Below are positions 24,428 to 38,009 of a DNA stretch of 64,000 nucleotides, piece after piece; the stretch's first letter is position 1, and every line of letters begins with the position of its first letter. Location: the NCBI GenBank assembly GCA_047495785.1, contig JBLDXI010000013.1, positions 2,728,001 to 2,792,000 on the forward strand, read 5' to 3'. A program made the position numbers and the translations under genes. The notes beneath the pieces are model-generated. The model was given only the letters and a program-made list of their open reading frames with translations. It had not been told where the DNA came from and made no database searches. Source of the stretch: Lepidodermella squamata. Taxonomy: Eukaryota; Animalia; Gastrotricha.

Positions 24428-27400
24428 TTATTTCTCTTCGAATCGCTTCTTTTCGAGCACAAACTTGAGGCCCTTGGTCTTCGAATGGAACCGAGCCAGG
24501 TCTTTCCGGGTAACAATACCAATGACATCGTTCATATCGTTGACAACAGTCAAGTGCCGCAGGCCTAGACCGCGGAACAGCTTGAAAATTCGAGGCAGTG
24601 ATACAGTCTGACAAAAATCCACCATAAAATTCAGAAATTACTAAATCCAAGTTTGACTCACATGTAAAACGGTGTATGGCGATGGATTCATATAAGGCCG
24701 CATGTCGATGTACATTTCTTTAATCTCTTCATCAGTCAGTTTGATATCCTGTACAAAATTGAAAAAAAATCATCCAACTGAAAATTAAGACTTCCAGGAA
24801 AAAACTTACATCAACGCTAAGTTCATGTTGGAAAAGCGTTCGGAAATCAGACAGCTTCGGCAGATCTCCAATAGGCTGGCCGCGGTTATTGCAGAAGCAT
24901 TTACGCTTGAGGAGGAAAAGCAATTGCTGACGCAAGATCAAGCCGCGAAGTTGGCCGTAGGTCATAAGCGATGATTTTCGCGTCGCTGGACCTTCAGCTA
25001 CCGGGAACCCGTTGTGCCGCACCTTTTTCAGAGTCGCCAGAACCCGACTAACAGGTTCGATAAGTTGGAAGTTCACAACAGGGTGACTCATGACCTCACT
25101 GAGAAAAACGATTAAATAAATGCAAAACGGTCGGAATTTCGATGATGCAAGAAATTTACGTTGCGTGAATTAAGGTGGAGAAGGGTGGCGGGTCGGGGTG
25201 AAGAAGAGGCACTCCAGATACTTCCAGATCAAGATCGTAGAGTGGCGCGGATAGCAGATCACCGATCCATTTTGTAATCATAAGGCACAACATGAGAGGA
25301 ACACCGAGAGTGATATCGCGCGTGCACTCCATCAACATGACCGTAAGGCCGACAACCATTCGCAATATGCCACCAAGCATACATGCAGCACCAATCAGCG
25401 CGTACTTGCGTATATTTCCTTCCTGTAACAAAAAAAAACATAGCGAATTATTATCAAAAATGATTGGAAAAACTTTGAGTGCACGAGCAAAATTTTAATG
25501 GACGTGACAACAAACGAGACAAGACGCAACATGCATGCGTGTTTGACATTTCAGTAAATATTTTTTAATCTCATTCAGGTTTCAAGAAGCCAAAAAGAAA
25601 ACATTAAAGCTCGATATAAATAATGGACAACACGTGTAATTTTTAACTGAACTTTGTCCACATACAACAACGAAAAATAAACAGTGGATCCAAGTCTCAA
25701 AGCCTACCTTTTCTTGGTTCCAAGGAAGATCCTGATTATCGATTATAATAAAGCGTGTTTAAAACGATGTTTTGTTATAAAAAAAATCAGATCAATTAGT
25801 TTTTTTTCCGGGGCAAAGAGCTCAAATTTTGAAATTCTTGACACTATTTTAATCCCAGAAAATTTTACACCTCAATTTAGACAGGTTAAATCAGAGCTCT
25901 TTACACAGATTCTGAAGCAAAAAAACTGGTCTTAAATAAATTGCAGGTAAGAAGTTAGGTCCACAAAATGGTAAAAATGGTCATAGCTCAAGCCTCAACT
26001 GTGACTCACCGGCTGCGGAAAGACGGTCATGACGCCCATGCCAATCATGCGGCCCCAACCGGCACCAATCAGCAGTCCAGGAATGAGGATGCCACCGGGG
26101 CACAACAAGCCGGTACCCCAGCACGTCATGATGAACCAGAACACCGTGTACACAATCAGCGTGTAGTAGTTGAAGTAGTTGGTCTGCGCGTGCAGCAACT
26201 GCTTCAGGCCGTGCTCGGCCGTGCCAAGCGTGAGGTAGGACATGGACGACACCTGGCCCTCGGGGCAGAACATGCGGAGCGGCTCGCCTTTGAGGTTATC
26301 GCTCGGCGGTTGGCACGACGGGTCGAGGTAGAGCATGAGGAAGTTGGCGACGGCCATGATCGCCGCGATCATGACGGCCTCGAGCACGCGCAGAACGCGG
26401 TTCGGGTTGATGTAACGCCGGCGGAAGACGTTGATTTTCATCGACAGATGAATGTACGCCGCGCCCATCACGCCGCCGAGGCAGCCGATGACGATGAAAA
26501 TGGGTATCTCAATAAGCGCGAACGACACATTGTCGAAGCGGCCGAATACAACGAGGCCAGGGTTGGACAGGTCGTGCGCGTGGCCGTGTTCAGCCGATAA
26601 CAACACGTTGACGAAGAACGAGGCCATCAGCGAGCAGAAGACAACGCGAAGCGTCAGCGTCGAGTCCCAGAAGCTGGCCGTTTCTTCGAGACTGAACAAC
26701 ACACCGCCGATTGGAGCACCAAACCCGGAACCGATACCGGCCGCAGCGCCCGCGGCCGTTATATCCCGCCTCTCTTGATCCGTATGAAGGTAACTGAAAG
26801 ACTATAAAACGACACAAAAATTAGTAAGCTATTAATTTTAAAATTGGAATTGGAATTGGAGTTTGGCAAAAATTTTGAAATTGTAAGATTATAATGACCC
26901 CTTTAAGGTTGATGAACGAATCGATATCAAACCAAAGCTAAAGACTATTTAAAAATGAAAGGGAATTTTTTCAAAAATAATCTAAAATTTCATTTTTATT
27001 CTCACAGGCTTCTCTGATCTCGCTCGCGTCCTACGTACTAGAAATATGGTTCACTCTACTTTCTTCGATCGAAAAAGGCAAAAACCCACGACTAAGAGCC
27101 CAGTAAATAAAAAAAATTCAGAAAAAATCTTCCATAAAAATGTGGATGTAAATTAAAAAAAATGAAAGAGGTCCCTACTGGTAGGAATCCGATGGGACAA
27201 AACTTGACCATGTCTTAAAATATTTTTTGCGATTTACTGGAAAATTCAGAAAATTCAGAAAAATGTCCACTTTAATTCCACGGTTCAATGAATTTAATAA
27301 AAAATTAATCTAAATTTTTAAGCGGAAAAAATTACCTTAATCTCAACATTGCATAAATCATAGCGAAAATATGAGGCACGAGCAGCAACAATGGCACCAA

Positions 27401-28633
27401 TGTGGATTAACGGACCCTCCTTGCCGTTGGGCATACCGCCCGACAGCGTACAGATAGTTCCGATGACTTTGACGATGAGCGCCTTGAACGTCAGCAAGCC
27501 ATGCATTCGGATACCGTTCAAGAAGGCCTTGACCTGGGCGACACCACCGCCGCCGGCTTCCGGCTGTAACACCAACACCAGGGTACACGAAACGAGAACG
27601 AAAGCGCAATTCATGCCAATCCATAACAACAACGGCTGATAAAGACAATTGCCTTCTTCCGTAACACATTTTTTCATGACTAGATGAAAAAAAATCACAA
27701 AAAATAGCCGAAAAATAAATTGACAAAATTGGCTTACATTTTGCCACAAAATCGTGCTTAGCAGTAGAGCAAAACTTGATTCCAACATCAACAGTAAATG
27801 CACACAACGCGATACCGGCCGCCGTGAGAAAGTAAATAAACCAGCGACCAATGAAAGTAAACCAGGCACTCTAAAAAAATTTGCAAAAATTGGGTCAGAG
27901 GAATATTGGGTCATGAACATCTCGCAAATGTTACCCGAGATTTAAGACTTCGCTGTTCAGCTTGGTAGAGCAGATTTTCACACACATCGTAGTCCAAGCT
28001 TTCAAACTTGGAAACAAGACGATGCTTCAGCGATTTAACCGAGAAAGGCTTAGCAGGCGGGCCGTGCGGTTGGCCTTGATTGAAATAACCCTGATGGTGG
28101 CCATACGCAAAGGTTTTTTGATTTTGCTTCTGAACAATCTGTTGAAAACAAACAGAAAAAAATTAATAAAAAAACCGAGGAAAATTGCAGCTATATACAA
28201 AAAATTTAAAGGAATACTTAAATAATAAACGCATACATCTTTAAATAATACACCGAACGCAATTAATGGGAATCAACACGTAATAATTGTTAATTGCTCT
28301 CACTGTTGAGTGATCTTCATCTGAAAGCGCAAAAGAGCGCATCGTTGGGACGCGCCTAAACCGGGCGTCGAGCGTATTCTGGCCCGAATCGTCGGCGTCA
28401 TCGCTCAACGCCGCCGCTGCTGAAGAGATGCCATCTTCGTTGTCGCTCATCTGTTTAATCTGCTCGCTGACCGAGCGGACGAAAGTTGCGATGGCGCCGG
28501 CTGGCCGACGATGACGGCCACCACCGCCTTCATCGCAACTCACCGACGCCTCGTCATCTTCCTCCTCCTCGTCGCCTTCGGGTGTCGTCACAAAAATCTT
28601 CATCTCAATGCCGTTTCTTTTATGGCCGCTCAT
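24428..28633 (-). CDS. CLC-6/CLC-7 family Cl-/H+ exchanger-type protein with two CBS domains (proximal isoform; alternative 5' exons extend to about 37023)
   Basis: [11 protein letters not shown]; GKEGP; AGAAAG...[14 protein letters not shown]; GILIP; YALIGAA..LGG; LYD; CBS segments HNGFPV and [12 protein letters not shown]...GIVTRKDL. Confidence 0.93.
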
Positions 28634-28855
28634 TTATAGCTCAAGGTGTATTAGAGACACCTCAAATTTGTCGCAGATCGTCGTTCGGCCATCATGTTAT
28701 AGCGACGATTAAGTCTAGCTCATCATTTAATGTCGAAAGTGTTAAATCTGCGATTATCATCTATCATCTATCATCCAAGTAAAATAAATCTGGGTTTAAG
28801 ACGATAGCTATATAAAAGTCTGGGGTGGCGAAGATGGGGATTTCTAAGGACGTAC

Positions 28856-29191
28856 CCTTTTAACGATTTCGTCAGCGTCACAACGCTCAAGAACCGACGC
28901 AGCGCTATGGGCATCGCGAAGCCGCTCGTGATCAACAGCATGCGGATGCAAGTCGATCATCGACAAATGGCTAAGTCCGGCTGAAACGGACAGCCGTCTT
29001 CGAGGCTCCGTGCGCGGCGTATCAGGCAGTTGCAGCTGGTGAAGCTGGTTCAACGCGAAGCCCGCCGCCTCACTCGGCGGTGACCACGGATTCGAATACG
29101 AATCAGGGTCATCGGAAATCGACGCAGCCGAAGACGAGCGCGATAATATAACGCGTATCTCCGGTGGAGGCGGTCGACTTTTCGCAGTCAT
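28856..29191 (-). CDS. Putative alternative first coding exon of the CLC gene (MTAKSRPPP...)
   Basis: ATG-initiated low-complexity ORF ending at a phase-0 donor (AGG|gtacgt), compatible with the phase-0 acceptor of the common exon at 28138. Confidence 0.6.
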
Positions 29192-31604
29192 TTTCAAACA
29201 GGCAAAATAATCAGCACAAGGTGCGACATAGGCGAGTTATCTTATTCTTCTCTATCGAATGCACTCGCGATTTATTGCTGGTGAAGTAGTAATAAAAACA
29301 GCGCGAAATAGCGAGATGAAAACCATACATCGCGCTCGGACAATGCTATCTTTTTAGCGGCTACTACGGCTATTAACGATGATCTGCGCGGGCCCTCACA
29401 CGCCAAGATGAGTCTATATGGGAATTAAATCACAGGGTATATACCTCCGCGTTATCGGGTACATTAGGTAAAAGTTTTGTATGAATAAGAAGGCGCGGAA
29501 GCGGGTGGACCAATATCTCATTTCTTATAACGAGAATGCGAATATTACAACAGCGTTTCTCGTATATCGGCGATATGGAAAATTCGGTCGTAAAAAATTC
29601 GCATGTGCAATGTGTACACCGAGCGCTAGCTACAAGCATAGTGATGCGCTGCGATTCGATACGTGTTTACCCGTCGCCGGTTTTTTTCGCGCAAGCGCGG
29701 AAATGCGCACACACATGTTCGTATTATACGATTTTTTAATATATATTATATGCGAAAAAAAGGGCGGGGAAACTGGAGGATGGATATATTGTTCAAGGCG
29801 GATAATATGGCGTAAAAAAAGCTCTGGTGCAACGCGTTGAAAGATGTTTAGCTCATAAAAATCACGCGCGATTTCGATTTAACGAAGCGCAGCGTTACAG
29901 CATAGAGAAATCACTCGAGTATTAACAAGGCGAGCAAACAGGCAACGGTGAAAATAGCACACGGCACGATTTCGCAGCGATAAAATACGATGATCTGTGT
30001 CTCGCCATCTTACTCTCGCAGACTGTAAATATTTCTATTACTGACGCTATTGGAGTATCTTCCGCTCAAGAGCAATCATAATATGTGGTCCACACATAAA
30101 AAATTGCAATAAAAAATAAAGAATGCAAGGTAACAATTCGAAAGTCCGGAAAAATATCGCGTGAAATACGTTGATTTTAAATTTCAATTTGAATCTAAAA
30201 GCGCCATGGATACGGAGAAATTAATATATTCTTAATTCTCGGTGAAAAGACACCAATAATTGTGCTAAAAAATAGCATTATGACAATATTCACCTCTGCT
30301 TCGCCCTCTTGAGAATACAGCGCCACTCAAAACATACGCGAGAGAAATACGAATAGAGCGTTTCCCAAGAAAAACATGCCGGTGCGTCGCGCTTGAAGTT
30401 TTTTGGAGACACATTTTTCAAACGCTTAAAAGACGCTGCTTTTTGCTAGGGCCGGCGTTTGTCATTGCTGTGTAACGTGAGATTTGATTTATTGGCACGC
30501 AAGTTGTTTTTTCCAAAAAATTTTGAATAGAAGTGACGCGAGCTGGCCTGCTTGGTAGCGATGTGCGGTCAGTATAGCAAATTTTGAATGTAATTCATGC
30601 CTATCGCATGTAATATGCGGCGAGGGTAAAAAAGTATCACATATTATACACGGCTAGATTTGTCGTATTTATTCAGAGCGTGTGTTTCGGCCGCCGGTGC
30701 GATCGGTTCTTGCGCGTTCTCTAAGTTAATTACTGTATTGACGATGGTTTTTATCATTCTCGTGACGAGAGAATATTATTCGCGCAACGCACATACATTT
30801 ATATATATTCCAACTTGGTACCACTAGTCTCGGTTGCCAGCGCGCGCAAGGTTGAAATAAAATAATAGGGAAAATCAAATTAAAAAAGTCGAGACCAAAA
30901 AAGTATTGACCCTGTTTTGGGTGAACAAGTTTCCATTATAGATTAAGCCTACTCATCGATGCGACAAATGAGCCCCACACACTAGCGATAGATTAAGCTT
31001 CTCACCCTTGGGAATAGTAACCATAAAATACTGCGAATATAGCAATATTGTTTGATATTATTCTTGCCAAATATTGATTTATGAATGAGATTTATTTGCC
31101 GCACTATCTTCATACACGTCCATGAATACGGGAATCGATAAACGGCAAGACAAACAAACTGACTAGCGAAAAAAAGAAACGTACCCTAAAGGGTTGAATC
31201 CGAAATTATAATTCGAATTGTAAAACGTACATGCGCTACTTCTTAAAAAAAATTACGCTTGCTCAACATTTCAACTGGGGACATGAACAACATATATATC
31301 ACATAAACGGGGTCGGTAAACAAATTTCAATGTAGAAAATAAAACGAAGATGCCGAGCGACGAATTGAAGGCTACCAATCTTGAAGATTTCCGAAGTTAC
31401 TGTGACAGATTTACACTGGCAAAATAACACCGATCAACAGAAATACCTCTCCTGGTGCCGTTGCTCGTCTGCTTTGAACCTTCACATCAGGTTATCGGTT
31501 TTTAATAACGGTTTACGAACTTAATAATTAGTGGCTAACTTGCTATATAAGCTATCTGGTAGTGCGTGATTCAGGCTAAAAAATAATCAGGTGAGGAATC
31601 TTAC

Positions 31605-32029
31605 CAAATCTTTCAGCTTTTGGCCCATTTCGAAATCGCCATCTCGCATCAAAGACAAGTGTTTCACGGTCCATGTAAATGTGTCAACGCTAGCCGAATC
31701 TGTCGGACTCAATTCGTCTGGGCGCCAATACGAGTCATCGACATCAACAGATAATGCAGCTTGAAAAATAGTTCATTAATCACAGCAGAATTAAATTAAA
31801 TTAATAAAATACCTGAGTGATCCAAGTTATCAGCATTTGACAGCAGTGAAGCATCCTGTTCGGCATCGATCGCCGGAATCGCATCCCCCTCTTCGACAAT
31901 TCGCGTAGAGGACGGCGGCCGCCGGCGCCGTGCGCTACCTGGTGCCGTATTAATCGGCACTCCGAGATTGCCCGATGGTGTGACATTAGCCGTCGGCTGG
32001 TCAGGATGGCTAACTGGTGTCACCGTGAA
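31605..32029 (-). CDS. Putative internal N-terminal exons of long CLC isoforms (32029-31813, 31759-31605)
   Basis: Both exons are open, joined by a short phase-1 intron; phase-0 entry and phase-0 exit (TTG|gtaag). Confidence 0.6.
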
Positions 32030-34595
32030 CTATCGTGAAAAAACATAGTGAAAAATTAAGGCAAATGATAAATTAGGAACAGGGTTAGTGGATCAGTATA
32101 TTTTTTTGGAAAATAGCTAGATTAGTCGGTTTAATCTCCCCGTTACCATTATCTATGTTTATTTATATAGTTTGAGATGTTGATCTAAATGTACGCTGTT
32201 ATATGACCAAGGCGCTGATCTATTTTTACTGGTTCTTACTTTTGGTTTTTCCATTCCACCTTGCTCTTATAAAGCGTGACAAAAACGCCTAAAAACGGTC
32301 GAATTTTTTACTAATAAAGCGAATGATAAAAACGCGGCGTCGCCGGTGTGTTTTCTCCCTCTGTTCTCTCGCTTTGTAAATTGTTTGATGATAATTAAAA
32401 ATGCGCCGCCGGTGAGCGTTAACCGAGCCGCATCCGAAAGCCGGATTTTTCAACCCAGCTTCAGATTTGGCGGTGAGTGGTAAAAGTTGTACCTAGTAGT
32501 TTTTTGGGTAAAATTCAAAAAAGCTTTCGAACCTTTACTCGGCGCCGTTGATGTGAAGACATGTCATCTTTCGACGACCCGAATTCGTTGCATTTTTTTG
32601 CGAGTGAAAATGAAGAAAAGTAAATAGAAGTAGAAACTATGGGGCGCCGCTATTTTTATATAAGTAAATGAGCGGTGTTTTAGCGCTTGATAAAGGACAG
32701 ACAAAGCCTGCACAAGAGACTCTCTACTCATTATATAAAAGATCGGAAAAAGTACATTTTTTGATGTCAAACACACACATAGCAGCGCTCATTCGCCGTG
32801 CGATGACTGCTGCGTAGGTATAGATGAGGCTGAGCAGGTATGTCTACCGCGGATAAATAGAACTATCAGCGTACATCGACTTGACAAACAGACGGCGGAA
32901 TATACTAGGTCCAAAACAGGACCGAGATGGGAAACATTCGTGGCGTTATACGAAGACGCCATTTCCATCTGCGGCTATCAAAAACATATCTAGACCGGCT
33001 CAGTTTCGCCTCGTTGCTCTAACTAGCAAATATCTAGAACATCTCACCCGAGCTAGGCGAGAAGTTGAACGAGGTGGAGTGTGCTGAAAGGAGCAACTTA
33101 TCGCCTACAAGATCACAGGCGAGAAGGGTGAGAGAAGAAACGTATAAAATGACGACAATAGCAGCGGCAATCACAAACAATTTTTTTCATAATTGCACCT
33201 GATTCAACGCTATTGACGTCAAAGTTCAAGCCCAAAATAGAGAAAAAGGCGCTATTTACTAGGAAAACAATACCTGACCAATTTGACCTTAAACAATGCA
33301 GGTTTCTATTTATAACAGATTTAATATATTAAAAACAAATATCCCAAAAAAACCCAGAAGATTTAGCGAACAAGAATGAGGAAATGACATAACGATAGAT
33401 TTTTCGAATTGTATTAAAAGCGATGGCGAAGACAGAAATATGCAAATCCGTTTATATCGCGAAAAAATCTATTACCACGAGAATACCGAAAGACAGAAAT
33501 AATCATATTGTTATATTATACACGAAAGCGCAGAAAAACGATTTTTCGATTATAGTATCGTACTGGCACCTTCAACGGCGCCAAATATTTGCTCTTTTCC
33601 AGGCTACCTCATCTAACATAAAACCGCAGTATTAAAGTGAAAACCGGGTTTTAAAAAATTGAGATGCAACAAGGTTAAACCCCCATTTAACGTTTCCATT
33701 GGTTTGGAAGGCTTGACATGAACTAAATCTTTGTAATTAATTCTTGTAACATCACGATAACATTAACGACAAACATGAGAGTAGCAAAATGCGCAATCTT
33801 CATTTTTTCTGAAGTCTTAATCCCATTAAGAGTAACGACGCGGTGCTTACGTCTGTGCTTGAATTCAATATAGCTCAACTATTTTTTCTAATTCGTAGCT
33901 ATAGTACTTGGGTTTCGCGTGCATACATTACAGACTCAGGTATATAATGCGGTGGTCATGTTCACGTGTGGCACCGGTGCCGGGAGCTGGCGATACACAT
34001 CGTAGCGCCTTTTTTCACTCTCCAGCTTGCATATGAATTTACTCGAATAGCAACGAGTGTAAAACTGAAGAGGGACGGCCGGTGAGAGGGAGATTTGATC
34101 TAAGAGTGAGCCCGGCAAACTTAGAGCACGGGCGTGATGACATGCTCACGATTCGTGTTCAAAACCGCGAAAAGAGCTCACAATAATTCTGAAAATAAAA
34201 GCGATGCCAAAAGTGGGCGCAGGTATTGCTGTAATCCATAAATCCAACCTTCAAAGAATGGACGGATTAAACAATAATCCCACTCTCAAAAACGAATATT
34301 AGGTAAATTAAACTGAAATAATTCAATAGGTTAATCTCACGCCCATCGCTCAACATGTAAGCAAAAGTCAGAAGGACAATTTTAAGCGTCGAGTTCGATT
34401 TATACATCGATTATTCAAACCTGGGAATGTTGGGGGAAAATCGAAAACATTCCTCATAATTTCTTAATGACCCCATAGTTTTGAAATGCCGCCCTGATCG
34501 ACTTTCACAGCACGGCAAATATTCAGAAAATTCAACACATACTTCAGATTGAATTCTACTTCTAAGCTGGACGTATGGAAATTAAACTAATTTAC

Positions 34596-35141
34596 CCCTT
34601 GTTCAAGGTCCTCGTCACCTCCAACTACAAATATGCTGCGTTTTGTTGCCGGTTTTTCGTGATTATTTTGCTTTTTCGATGAATCAGGCGATCTGAAGGA
34701 TAATCGCTTTTTCTTGACAACTGCGTCACTAATCGTATTTTTCACCAAAGCCGAATCGGCTGCATTGCAGTCGTAAGGAGTAAAACTTAAAAATCGCTTC
34801 GGCGATGGCTGGCAGTGGTTATTATGGGAGAAAGAACGACGGTGATTATGGCGCCGGTTACGGCCCGGCGGCGTTATTGCGTTATGGCGATCCTTTGCTT
34901 CCTCTTTGAATTCATCAGCGATGAGCAATCGATCGGCTTCAGATGACAGAGGGTTGAGAACGTCGTCACTGAACGCCGACCGGATAACAACTACTTCTTC
35001 GTCGTCAACATAAGGAATTCGTTCATCGATGCTGAAACAGCCGAGGCTAGCCGTCATTCGCGGCCCAGCGCTTTCAAACGATGCCGGCGATAGCTCGTGT
35101 AACGACACGTGTGTATCCGACGGTGGAACATCTTTTGCCAT
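34596..35141 (-). CDS. Putative alternative first coding exon of the CLC gene (MAKDVPP...)
   Basis: 182 codons ending at a phase-0 donor (GGG|gtaaat); contains an EADRLL dileucine motif. Confidence 0.55.
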
Positions 35142-36735
35142 AAAACTCAGGTCGAATTGATGACAAAACCACCAATCATCGGGCACATAATTTCGCGTAA
35201 CAAAATATTGTAATTTAGCATCTATGTACTCCGCACTTCAAAAGAGTATATAAGCAGGTTAAAAGCTGGGTGCTTAACATCTGATGACAAACTATAAATA
35301 AAAAAAGCGCCGCATAACAATGCAGAGCAAGTTTTGCGTGATTTCCGCGTAAATATTAGATTGCTATGAATTCTCACGCCAAAAATCGTAAAAAAAAGCT
35401 ACGTAAAACTAGGGGAGCGCAGAATTAGACTATTTATCGCAGGTCTGCAGTTTTTTGGGTCCTCAAATCTAAATGAATTGCACTGATCGTGGAAAGATAA
35501 CAAAGGGATGCGGCATTTTTTTCCCGGCTTAAATTCGAATAATACAGATCAGCGCGAAGTAGGTGTTAAATAATTGTATCTAAGCTGCCTTTCTTCTTGC
35601 ACAATAAAAAAGGTGTTCAGTTCACAATAGTAAAAATGAGCGTCGGTATGAATAGGAAATGCTGCTAGCCGCAGTTATTGGATAAAAAAGCGATATTTTT
35701 AAACACGTGTCAAAAGCTGAGCGCAGCCTGGTGCGGTTGTTGCCGATATAATAGAATAATAATGTCTTTTTAGCGGCATTCTTTTATCAATCTATTAGGC
35801 GCCGGCATGCTGGTTTTGTCATCAATAAATGCAAATAAATTATGGTGTGGGGTGCGCACAAAAAAACGGCCTAAAAAATCAACATTGAAATGAAACATGA
35901 ACGCAATGGCACAGGCTGATATCTTCGATTTTACGTGCCAGCTGCGAGCTGCGAAAAAATGCTGCAGTATGGTCAAGTATGTCCCACCCTCCGTTAACAG
36001 TAAGGTCTTATAAACAATAATATCGAGAAAATGCAATACGCTGGAACTTGCTATAATAAGATAAATGATTACTCTGCAGCAGCTCTTGCGTAAAAAATGA
36101 CAAGTTCGGGAGTGAATGATCTCCTATGGGTATTGAATGCGTGAGTAAAAAATTCCAATTCTCAAACACTCTCATGTCTTTCGTGGTCCCAATGGAATAG
36201 GTGTAGCATAAAAAAATGACTGAAGTTATGGTAAAAAACCGTAAAATTTATAAGTATACTAGGCCGCCATCTCATGTATATATGTAGCAGCATAATGAAT
36301 ATGATGAAATGTACAACACTTTTGCGCGTCGCCGCATATACGGCGCATTTTTTACTCGGTTGGCGACATACGCGCCGCCGATTGATCTGCCTTTTCGCTT
36401 TACAAATCGCCCCTCGTTTATAGTTTTTTAACTTCGTACAAATTTGTGCGCACCAGAGGCGCAAATATACTTTCGGCTACTAGGGTATGGGGAAAAAAAT
36501 AAGGAATATAATACACGATGCTTTCACGCGCATTCAATATCCGCCGCCCCTTCAAGCGCTCTAAAATTAGTGGCCAACAACCTATCAAAAGCAAAAAATA
36601 AGAAAAAAATGACTTTTGCCGCAAAAATAAAATTAGTGGAGCGCGATGCTTGACTGTCCATGTAAGAGTTGAAATTCTATTACTAGTATTGATTGGCCCC
36701 AGATTAGTTTAACACATCTAAAAACGGAAACTTAC

Positions 36736-37023
36736 GACTTTTTTACGCCGAGCCGCTAGACTAGTACCAGAGACTGCTGCAGCTTTGCTGACGACCGGAT
36801 TCGGCGGTGTTTTTATCGGTGTTTCAATTTGACCGAGCCCATCTTCCGATATTCTTTTAACGGCAAAACGCCTGTAAACCGGCAGAGAAGTGGCTGGTGC
36901 CAATTTTGGGTGAGATGGCTGAGTGACGGGCGAGCTATAACGGTTTCCCGTCCCACTTCGATTGCTGCTAATGCTGGCGTTACTCCGCGTGAATTCGCCA
37001 TTTTTCTCGCCATTAGCCGCCAT
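36736..37023 (-). CDS. Putative distal alternative first coding exon of the CLC gene (MAANGEK...)
   Basis: 96 codons ending at a consensus phase-0 donor (GTC|gtaagt). Confidence 0.55.
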
Positions 37024-38009
37024 TAAACGAGTAAGCACCGCCGATTGTTATTATGACCGGCAGTGGTAAACAGGCAAAAAATCGAAAGTTTGACAGTTTG
37101 CGTGTTTTTTTGGCGTGGATTTGTAGGAAAACAGTGATATGGATAAATTGCTCCAGCGCAGCAGTAGTGATAATGCTTATCTTGCTATTTGTCGCAGCTC
37201 CTTGCTCTTATTTGCACTTTCTGTCAATGGGAACAAGACACCGACCGAACATGTGCTTTTTCGTACGCGACGTGTTTGCTGAACAAAGAACAATATAAAT
37301 TACAGAAAACACGCGAATAAAAAGTGAAACATTCTTGTAGCGTGAACGCGTTGCTAAATAATTGAGCTAATACTATAGTACTATTATTACTCGGCAGCTC
37401 GCGTTCCCACAACTATCAGCAACTTTCGGCCTGGAGCGATAATCATAGTTCCACATTCTTCTCCGACCTGGATTTCTTCGGCAACCGCAACCAGCTGATT
37501 TCTCTTCGCATGAGTAAGAAAAAACCGAAGGAAAATAAATATAATAATATTAAAAAAGGCAATAACATCGTGAGCAGTTATTCGGTGTTTTATTCACCCT
37601 GTTGTTTTTTTTTCTTCCGTTTCTCGCGCGTTCATTCAAGTGCAATCGATCATCATATACACAGACGTTGTGCGCACTTAACGCAACGATTACACATACG
37701 AAAAACTGACAGCGATTGCGCTCAACAAATCCACCTTAAAGCATCGGGCGAACGCGCATGTACAACATTGCAATTAGTCATCACGTGCTCTTTTCTCCAG
37801 AACTAGTGTTGTAATGATATTATAAAAAATAATCGCACTATATATAGCAGATTGACCGGTAAACTTGTATTATTCACGCCAAAAGAAACCAGAGAAAAGA
37901 CGGAAACAAAATTTATCATGATTTATCGCTGACATTTAATCAACTATACACGTTATTGTTCACAAAATTGTTGATGACTCCGAAATGAAGTAGAAAATTC
38001 GACTGTCTA

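What the first reader, a model, noticed from the sequence alone, without database searches (positions are those of the whole stretch)
28138..37023. The 9-kb 'gene desert' is a cassette of alternative N-termini for the CLC transporter
Five ATG-initiated segments (37023-36736, 35141-34596, 32562-32533 [weakest], 29191-28856, 28633-28304) all end at phase-0 GT donors. They match the phase-0 acceptors at 32029 and at the common exon (28138). They encode unrelated disordered tails with different signals: EADRLL ([DE]xxxLL, as in CLC-7 lysosomal sorting), DASLL in the internal exon, RRLS/KRLS/RRSFS kinase sites and an acidic tract. One atypical transporter core may thus be sent to different membranes from multiple promoters, which is striking in such a compact genome.
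Basis: partly seen in the sequence, partly recalled or inferred. Interest (0 to 1): 0.75.

Follow-up and report, generated by a model that had tools for sequence, protein, structure and literature searches.

The report
Alternative first exons of a CLC-7-like gene
The 10-kb "empty" stretch in front of a lysosome-type chloride transporter gene of a small invertebrate (probably a gastrotrich) holds several start-codon exons that can each be spliced onto the same transporter body; this is a common way to vary a protein's front end, here backed by sequence statistics and one related species but not by RNA data.

Summary
All five minus-strand segments start with ATG, are open, and end at a GT donor in phase 0. 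That matches the phase-0 acceptors at 32029 and 28138. It is more than chance: about 1 ATG-ORF of at least 96 codons is expected per strand and 4 are seen. All 4 carry a good phase-0 donor near their end (7.7% each by chance). The two plus-strand ORFs carry none.

A related species (metagenome contigs) conserves the internal module, the common exon and E1d. E1d keeps its ATG and has its donor at the same spot. The 10-codon E1c may also be conserved. E1a, E1b and E1e have no counterpart there and no paralogue in the own genome. E1b and E1e look coding; E1a is borderline.

E1a, E1d and E1e have an in-frame stop upstream and no in-phase acceptor, so if coding they can only be first exons.

- The "internal exon" is two exons (I1, I2), plus a candidate 33-nt micro-exon.
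- The sorting and kinase motifs are at chance level, apart from a conserved [DE]xSLL.
- "Multiple promoters" is unproven. Other agents' notes say this genome uses spliced-leader trans-splicing.

I could reach no RNA evidence. The scan had already noted this gene for its altered pore. Verdict: a plausible, partly conserved case of a known mechanism.

The parts
36736..37023 (-). E1a: candidate alternative first coding exon, 96 codons, ATG to GTC|GTAAGT (phase 0). Would join I1 at 32029.
   Evidence: ATG, open, donor. (in-frame TAA 8 codons upstream, no acceptor, so first exon only). (6/6 donor). (coding score 0.033, borderline; GC 0.52). No homologue in the relative. Unique in the own genome.
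34596..35141 (-). E1b: candidate alternative first coding exon, 182 codons, ATG to GGG|GTAAAT (phase 0). Would join I1.
   Evidence: ORF length P = 0.01; donor 5/6; coding score 0.112, the median of long ORFs. No homologue found. No Pfam domain.
32533..32562 (-). E1c: 10-codon mini first exon MSSHQRRRVK|GTTCGA, 503 nt upstream of the I1 acceptor.
   Evidence: The relative has ATG..MNRRHVK|GTACAA 440 nt upstream of its I1 acceptor. It is one of 2 basic candidates among 44 ATG..phase-0 GT segments there. The DNA similarity is not significant.
31813..32029 (-). I1: internal coding exon (phase 0 to phase 1). Starts FTVTPVSH and holds the conserved RRP, RIVEE and [DE]xSLL motifs.
   Evidence: Conserved in the relative's paralogues A and B (shuffle P = 0.0005). 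The FTVTPV motif is also at residue 25 of the Tubulanus CLC-7-like protein.
31605..31759 (-). I2: internal coding exon (phase 1 to phase 0), with SVDTFTWT.KHLSL.R.GDF..GQ.L.DL|GTAAGA.
   Evidence: 60% identity, E = 2e-15; single copy in the own genome. Fused with I1 in the relative.
31447..31479 (-). I3: candidate 33-nt cassette micro-exon (AG..GT, phase 0/0), VQSRRATAPGE. The similarity continues past the GT to a stop at 31411.
   Evidence: blastn 79% over 34 nt; E = 2e-5; 9-nt in-frame indel. The relative's version is 45 nt.
28856..29191 (-). E1d: alternative first coding exon, 112 codons, ATG to AGG|GTACGT (phase 0). Joins X1 directly.
   Evidence: upstream in-frame stop, no acceptor; score 0.124. 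The relative has an ATG ORF at the syntenic spot ending ..RCDAQETIDK|GTATGA, against ours ..RCDADEIVKR|GTACGT (shuffle P = 0.006).
28304..28633 (-). E1e: candidate alternative first coding exon, 110 codons, ATG to ACA|GTGAGA (phase 0), 165 nt upstream of X1.
   Evidence: TAA directly before the ATG; highest coding score, 0.214; GC 0.57. No counterpart in the relative's 335-nt E1d-X1 intron. Unique in the own genome.
27935..28138 (-). X1: common exon (68 codons, no Met) with the conserved ..[28 protein letters not shown].. loop.
   Evidence: (58% identity to the relative, E = 5e-22). The acceptor position is conserved.
24428..27870 (-). CLC body, exons X2-X8: 27870-27738, 27679-27336, 26801-26010, 25422-25160, 25098-24810, 24748-24662, 24607-24428 including the stop. 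With X1 this is 763 codons.
   Evidence: all AG..GT, frame continuous, no internal stop; Pfam Voltage_CLC; 82-90% identity to the relative's paralogue A.

Best explanation
The 9.9-kb interval between the upstream gene's stop (about 38010) and the common exon X1 (28138) is the 5' region of the CLC-7-like gene. It encodes a modular, largely disordered N-terminus.

Every junction is phase 0, so exons can be combined freely. There are two routes into X1:
- A start exon (E1c, and probably E1b and E1a) splices to I1 at 32029. It continues through I2 and, optionally, the 33-nt I3, and then enters X1.
- A start exon lying inside the last long intron (E1d or E1e) splices straight to X1.

This gives one transporter core of 763 residues with N-terminal tails of about 110 to 306 residues.

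What is shown:
- The exon design.
- Its excess over chance.
- Conservation of I1, I2, X1 and E1d in a second species.
- E1a, E1d and E1e cannot be internal exons.

What is inferred:
- Each start exon is really transcribed and joined.
- Exon choice is made by separate promoters or by separate spliced-leader acceptor sites.
- The tails change sorting or regulation. In mammalian ClC-7 and ClC-3 the N-terminal tails carry the sorting motifs.
For: - Design: ATG, open frame, phase-0 GT for all five; phase-0 acceptors; I1/I2/I3/X1-X8 boundaries, frame continuity.
- Excess over chance: (4 ORFs of at least 96 codons against 1.04 expected, P = 0.02; 184-codon ORF P = 0.01). (4 of 4 with a phase-0 donor at 5/6 or better near the ORF end, against 7.7% in simulation and 0 of 2 on the other strand).
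- Composition: (GC islands on the segments). (the only open frames in the interval with positive coding score are these segments: E1e 0.214, I2 0.187, I1 0.165, E1d 0.124, E1b 0.112, E1a 0.033; all others -0.05 to -0.25).
- First-exon status: (in-frame stop upstream and no in-phase AG for E1a, E1d, E1e).
- Comparative. The relative's syntenic interval has I1+I2 as one exon, the X1 acceptor in the same place, and an ATG ORF at the E1d position with the donor at the same residue (P = 0.006). It also has an unrelated 92-codon ATG ORF with a phase-0 GTAATG donor further upstream, i.e. the same architecture.
- Need for an upstream ATG: X1 and I1 are conserved from their first codon and X1 has no Met, so an upstream ATG exon is required.
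- Not something else: (the interval is unique, with no repeats, tRNAs or Rfam families).
Against: - No RNA evidence for any junction.
- E1a, E1b and E1e have no homologue in the one related species available, nor anywhere else.
- E1a's coding score is no better than that of shadow ORFs.
- E1c's donor (GTTCGA) is weak, and its similarity to the relative is not significant at DNA level.
- Each ORF also stops 2-20 codons after the donor, so the sequence alone cannot exclude stand-alone small ORFs.
- Introns of 2.6 and 4.7 kb would be very long for a gene whose other introns are 53-587 nt.
Confidence: 0.6

Rival explanations
1. Only the two conserved routes are real (mini first exon -> I1/I2 -> X1, and E1d -> X1). 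E1a, E1b and E1e are lineage-specific young ORFs or separate small orphan genes in the long 5' intron or intergenic space, and are not joined to the CLC.
For: No homologue of E1a, E1b or E1e in the relative or in the databases. Each is followed by a stop 2-20 codons after the putative donor. E1a's coding score is 0.033. The introns required, 2.6-4.7 kb, are atypical.
Against: All three end at a phase-0 donor of 5/6 or 6/6 match close to the ORF end (chance 7.7% each), in the phase the acceptors need. E1b and E1e score like true exons. The relative also has a non-homologous ATG ORF with a phase-0 donor at a comparable position, as expected for fast-evolving first exons.
Confidence: 0.22
2. The upstream start exons are used but are mainly regulatory. 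They would be alternative 5' ends (alternative promoters or SL acceptor sites) that tune expression or feed nonsense-mediated decay, without the tails having distinct sorting functions.
For: The tails are unconserved and domain-free. I3 carries conserved sequence running into a stop, as poison or terminal exons do.
Against: Codon-level coding signal in E1b and E1e. The C-terminal 22 residues and an RRxS site of E1d are conserved. In mammals the N-terminal tails of ClC-7 and ClC-3 carry sorting signals (PMC8833911, PMC10134905).
Confidence: 0.1
3. Chance ORFs in a long intergenic region. The CLC would start from a single unrecognised exon.
For: ORFs of 100-130 codons are individually expected about once per strand.
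Against: Joint statistics of ORF number, length and phase-0 donors. GC islands and coding scores. Conservation of E1d and I1/I2.
Confidence: 0.04
4. The segments are consecutive constitutive exons of one very long N-terminus.
For: All junctions are phase 0.
Against: E1a, E1d and E1e have an in-frame stop just upstream of the ATG with no in-phase AG between. E1b has only one weak in-phase acceptor, which would add an AT-rich, non-coding-like stretch.
Confidence: 0.02

Closest known systems
Mammalian ClC-3 splice variants (ClC-3a/b/c)
   Same: One CLC exchanger core with alternative N-termini. The variants are reported to go to different endosomal compartments (ClC-3b to lysosomes, ClC-3c to recycling endosomes) with identical transport (Guzman et al. 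2015, as cited in PMC10134905).
   Different: A different CLC branch (ClC-3/4/5, not 6/7). There are fewer N-terminal alternatives. In ClC-3 the isoforms are shown by cDNA and localisation; here they are only predicted from DNA.
Mammalian ClC-7 N-terminal dileucine lysosomal sorting motifs
   Same: The same CLC branch. A disordered N-terminal tail lies upstream of the conserved ..ESLDYD.. loop. In mammals that tail carries the acidic dileucine motifs whose mutation sends ClC-7/Ostm1 to the plasma membrane (Stauber & Jentsch 2010, as cited in PMC8833911). Here [DE]xSLL is conserved in I1 and EADRLL occurs in E1b.
   Different: To my knowledge, mammalian ClC-7 is not described with a set of alternative first exons. 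The motifs here are untested, and only one is conserved.
C. elegans CLH-3a/CLH-3b (from my own knowledge, not checked in a paper here)
   Same: An invertebrate CLC gene that yields isoforms differing by an N-terminal extension, in a genome that uses SL trans-splicing.
   Different: CLH-3 is a ClC-2-type plasma-membrane channel. It has two isoforms, which also differ at the C-terminus.

Membership tests
CLC-6/7-type Cl-/H+ exchanger | Voltage_CLC transmembrane domain | tested here: met
   Pfam PF00654 on X3 (E = 1.5e-15) and X4 (E = 7.8e-42). Best named relatives are CLC-7-like proteins.
CLC-6/7-type Cl-/H+ exchanger | N-terminal ..[YF]ESLDYD.. loop ahead of helix B | tested here: met
   X1 reads ..[17 protein letters not shown]... 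The same motif is in the CLC-7-like proteins P0002-P0004.
CLC-6/7-type Cl-/H+ exchanger | Gating glutamate (GKEGP) and proton glutamate (FSLEE) | tested here: met
   X3 has GKEGPLIH and X4 has GGVLFSLEE.
CLC-6/7-type Cl-/H+ exchanger | Canonical GSGIP anion-site motif | tested here: not met
   X3 reads GGGVAQVK and the relative reads GGGTAQVK. This is the subject of the earlier finding s1-379812. The gene is a divergent member, so I file it as 'CLC-7-like'.
Gene with mutually exclusive alternative first coding exons (ClC-3a/b/c type) | Two or more ATG-containing 5' exons that cannot be internal, each with a donor compatible with a shared acceptor | tested here: met
   E1d is conserved with its donor in a second species.
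Gene with mutually exclusive alternative first coding exons (ClC-3a/b/c type) | Transcripts that join each first exon to the common exon | not testable with these tools
   No RNA-derived sequence of this gene could be reached.
Gene with mutually exclusive alternative first coding exons (ClC-3a/b/c type) | Isoform-specific localisation or regulation | not testable with these tools
   Needs tagged expression. From the residue frequencies I estimate about 0.8 [DE]xxxL[LI] matches by chance in about 570 residues; one is seen (E1b).

The most novel reading that the evidence does not exclude
A single divergent lysosome-type CLC (with the rebuilt GGGVA anion site) is distributed to several membranes or cell types by a five-way choice of N-terminal exon. 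This species, which lacks the tandem paralogue CLC-B kept by its relative, has replaced gene duplication with extra lineage-specific first exons (E1a, E1b, E1e).
Probability: 0.12. Interest if true: 0.6.

Novelty: new member of a known kind. Interest (0 to 1): 0.33.

Why it matters
If confirmed, this would be a natural case of one endolysosomal CLC core carrying several interchangeable cytosolic tails, in a phylum with almost no molecular data. It would allow two things:
- a test of which tail elements sort or regulate CLC-7-type exchangers;
- a comparison of 'more isoforms' against 'more paralogues' between two related species.

For annotation, it shows that the long 'empty' interval belongs to the CLC gene, and that gene models need at least two start exons. 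Alternative first exons are common in animal genes and are already known for CLC genes, so a specialist would be only moderately surprised.

Tried and rejected
- Word-index protein search with E1b: nothing.
- Profile of X1 plus the relative's X1: only the relative's own ORF and one distant contig, L031. L031 lacks I1/I2 and was uninformative.
- Word-index search with X4: only the relative's two paralogues, so no closer species and no RNA-derived fragment.
- Exact-product look-ups of the E1e and E1b read-through ORFs: not on record.
- JGI metagenome scan with the I2 profile: no relative.
- ESM Atlas with E1b: no usable hit.
- Own-genome searches for copies of the interval and of E1a, E1b, E1e, and for I2: single copy. 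This rejects repeats, transposon remnants and paralogue relics.
- Rfam, tRNA and repeat scans of the interval: only a sub-threshold RNase P hit that I take for noise, and one weak inverted repeat.
- The relative's 92-codon ORF against E1a and E1b: no significant similarity, despite a shared MAAN start and a similar end.
- E1c DNA similarity to the relative: not significant.
- Polymorphisms among the relative's contigs: too few to test constraint. Two fall in candidate exons, both at third codon positions.
- My first coding test with dinucleotide shuffles was not conditioned on open frames. I replaced it with the comparison to real shadow ORFs.
Exons were searched one by one by reference. Frame continuity was only counted in a script.
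Full report
**Setting.** The window is G000:C13:2728001-2792000 of a 121-Mb eukaryotic assembly. Other agents' notes call it a probable gastrotrich (Lepidodermella squamata) that uses spliced-leader trans-splicing. I did not test either point.

On the minus strand lies a CLC-7-like gene. Its body is X1 28138-27935 plus X2-X8 down to the stop at 24430-24428. That is 763 codons, all boundaries are AG..GT, and there is no internal stop. Pfam finds Voltage_CLC. The next gene upstream on the same strand ends at about 38010. The 'desert' is therefore 9.9 kb, in a gene whose other introns are 53-587 nt.

**The observation.** All five segments are as described: ATG, open frame, length divisible by 3, GT directly after. 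Both acceptors (32029, 28138) are phase 0.

The 'internal exon' is in fact two exons. I1 is 32029-31813 and ends in phase 1. I2 is 31759-31605 and returns to phase 0. A 53-nt intron separates them.

**Is it more than chance?**
- Order-2 Markov simulations of the interval give 1.04 ATG-ORFs of at least 96 codons per strand. The minus strand has four (P = 0.02). An ORF of 184 codons has P = 0.01.
- All four end with a phase-0 donor matching GTRAGT at 5-6 of 6 positions within their last 21 codons. This happens in 7.7% of simulated ORFs and in neither of the two plus-strand ORFs.
- GC islands coincide with the segments.
- With a 3-periodic Markov model trained on half of 250 kb of this genome, the only open frames in the interval with positive scores are these segments and their shadows. 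Scores: E1e 0.214, I2 0.187, I1 0.165, X1 0.128, E1d 0.124, E1b 0.112, E1a 0.033. Long ORFs have a median of 0.112, shadow ORFs 0.02, and other desert ORFs fall between -0.05 and -0.25.
- E1a is thus borderline on codon structure, but it has the best donor.

**Can they be anything but first exons?** E1a, E1d and E1e have an in-frame stop 8, 15 and 0 codons upstream of the ATG, with no in-phase AG between. E1b has one weak in-phase acceptor. One long constitutive N-terminus is therefore excluded. X1 and I1 contain no Met and are conserved from their first codon, so each needs an upstream ATG exon.

**Comparative evidence.** A representative search with X4 gave a 66%-identical 267-aa fragment, P0001. 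Its contigs are ENA metagenome scaffolds of a related species (L022-L027, 38% GC). They are syntenic from Snf7/NUDT21 through the DEAD/SPRY helicase.

That species has two tandem CLC paralogues. A is the orthologue (82-90% identity) and B is 59-72% identical. The own genome has only A.

In the relative's 5.8-kb interval:
- I1 and I2 form one exon: FTVTPVSH...QRLQDL|GTAATT. I2 is 60% identical, E = 2e-15. I1 has shuffle P = 0.0005.
- The X1 acceptor is in the same place.
- An ATG ORF sits between I2 and X1, ending ..RCDAQETIDK|GTATGA. Ours ends ..RCDADEIVKR|GTACGT, and both carry an RRxS site (P = 0.006).

So at least two routes into X1 are conserved.

About 440 nt before the relative's I1 acceptor lies ATG..MNRRHVK|GTACAA, resembling E1c (MSSHQRRRVK|GT, 503 nt upstream). 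It is one of two basic candidates among 44. The DNA similarity is not significant, so this is suggestive only.

Further upstream the relative has a 92-codon ATG ORF with a phase-0 GTAATG donor. It shows no significant similarity to E1a or E1b. The architecture is the same but homology is not demonstrable.

E1a, E1b and E1e have no counterpart there, no paralogue in the own genome and no Pfam domain.

The I1 start motif FTVTPV recurs at residue 25 of a nemertean RefSeq CLC-7-like protein, after a 24-residue leader. The statistics are weak (E = 0.02) but the position fits.

**An extra element.** About 125 nt after I2 lies a conserved block, the only alignable 'intronic' DNA in the interval. It is AG|33 nt|GT in this genome (31479-31447) and AG|45 nt|GT in the relative, both phase 0/0, encoding ..RR.TAPG[EK]. 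Similarity continues past the GT, with a 9-nt in-frame indel, up to a stop. It is either a cassette micro-exon with a conserved intronic enhancer, or an alternative terminal or poison exon.

**What could not be done.** No RNA-derived sequence for this gene was reachable. The three word-index searches see only proteins of 0.55-1.75 times the query length, and they returned only the relative's genomic ORFs. Exact look-ups and a JGI scan were blank.

**Interpretation.** The best reading (0.6) is a modular 5' region with alternative ATG first exons feeding two phase-0 acceptors. It would give tails of about 110-306 residues on one core.

The functional gloss is weaker. From the residue frequencies I estimate about 0.8 [DE]xxxL[LI] matches by chance in about 570 residues, and one is seen. 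Only [DE]xSLL in I1 (DASLL in ours, ETSLL in the relative) and the RRxS and C-terminal block of E1d are conserved. 'Multiple promoters' is not shown. If this genome trans-splices, alternative SL acceptors are an equal option: an AG lies 4-6 nt before the ATG of E1b, E1c and E1e, which is not significant.

**Known precedents.** ClC-3a/b/c have different N-termini and different endosomal destinations (PMC10134905, citing Guzman 2015). The ClC-7 N-terminal dileucine motifs direct lysosomal sorting (PMC8833911, citing Stauber & Jentsch 2010). This is therefore a new member of a known kind. It is notable mainly for the number of candidate start exons and for the contrast with the relative, which keeps two paralogues.

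Noticed in passing
L025:11300-17629 (relative) versus window 24428-28138: The related species has two tandem CLC-7-like paralogues (A = orthologue at 82-90% aa identity; B at 59-72%) upstream of the same DEAD/SPRY helicase gene. The own genome has only A (best other CLC hits are at most 41% identical).
   Followed up: partly
window 31411-31479 (-); L025:9925-10020: A conserved 33-nt (45-nt in the relative) AG..GT phase-0/0 block after I2. Similarity runs on past the GT through a 9-nt in-frame indel to a stop. It is a candidate cassette micro-exon, or an alternative terminal or poison exon.
   Followed up: partly
window 31760-31812 (-): The 53-nt intron splitting I1 and I2 (phase 1) is absent in both paralogues of the relative, where the module is one exon. 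This is an intron gain or loss between the two species.
   Followed up: partly
window 32012-32029 (-); P0002 residues 25-30: The I1 start motif FTVTPV is shared with the nemertean Tubulanus polymorphus CLC-7-like protein XP_074644384.1. This hints at an old N-terminal motif or exon boundary in this CLC branch.
   Followed up: partly
L025:7339-7614: The relative's 92-codon ATG ORF has a phase-0 GTAATG donor. It is not similar to E1a or E1b, yet its single polymorphism among contigs is a synonymous third-position change.
   Followed up: partly
window 27534-27560 (-); L023:3830-3860: The altered anion-site motif (GGGVAQ in this genome) reads GGGTAQ in the relative's orthologue, so the change predates the split of the two species. 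This is the subject of the earlier finding s1-379812.
   Followed up: no
window 37506-37628 (-): A sub-threshold Rfam hit to Plasmodium RNase P (32.8 bits against a gathering score of 100, E = 0.03). I take it for noise.
   Followed up: no
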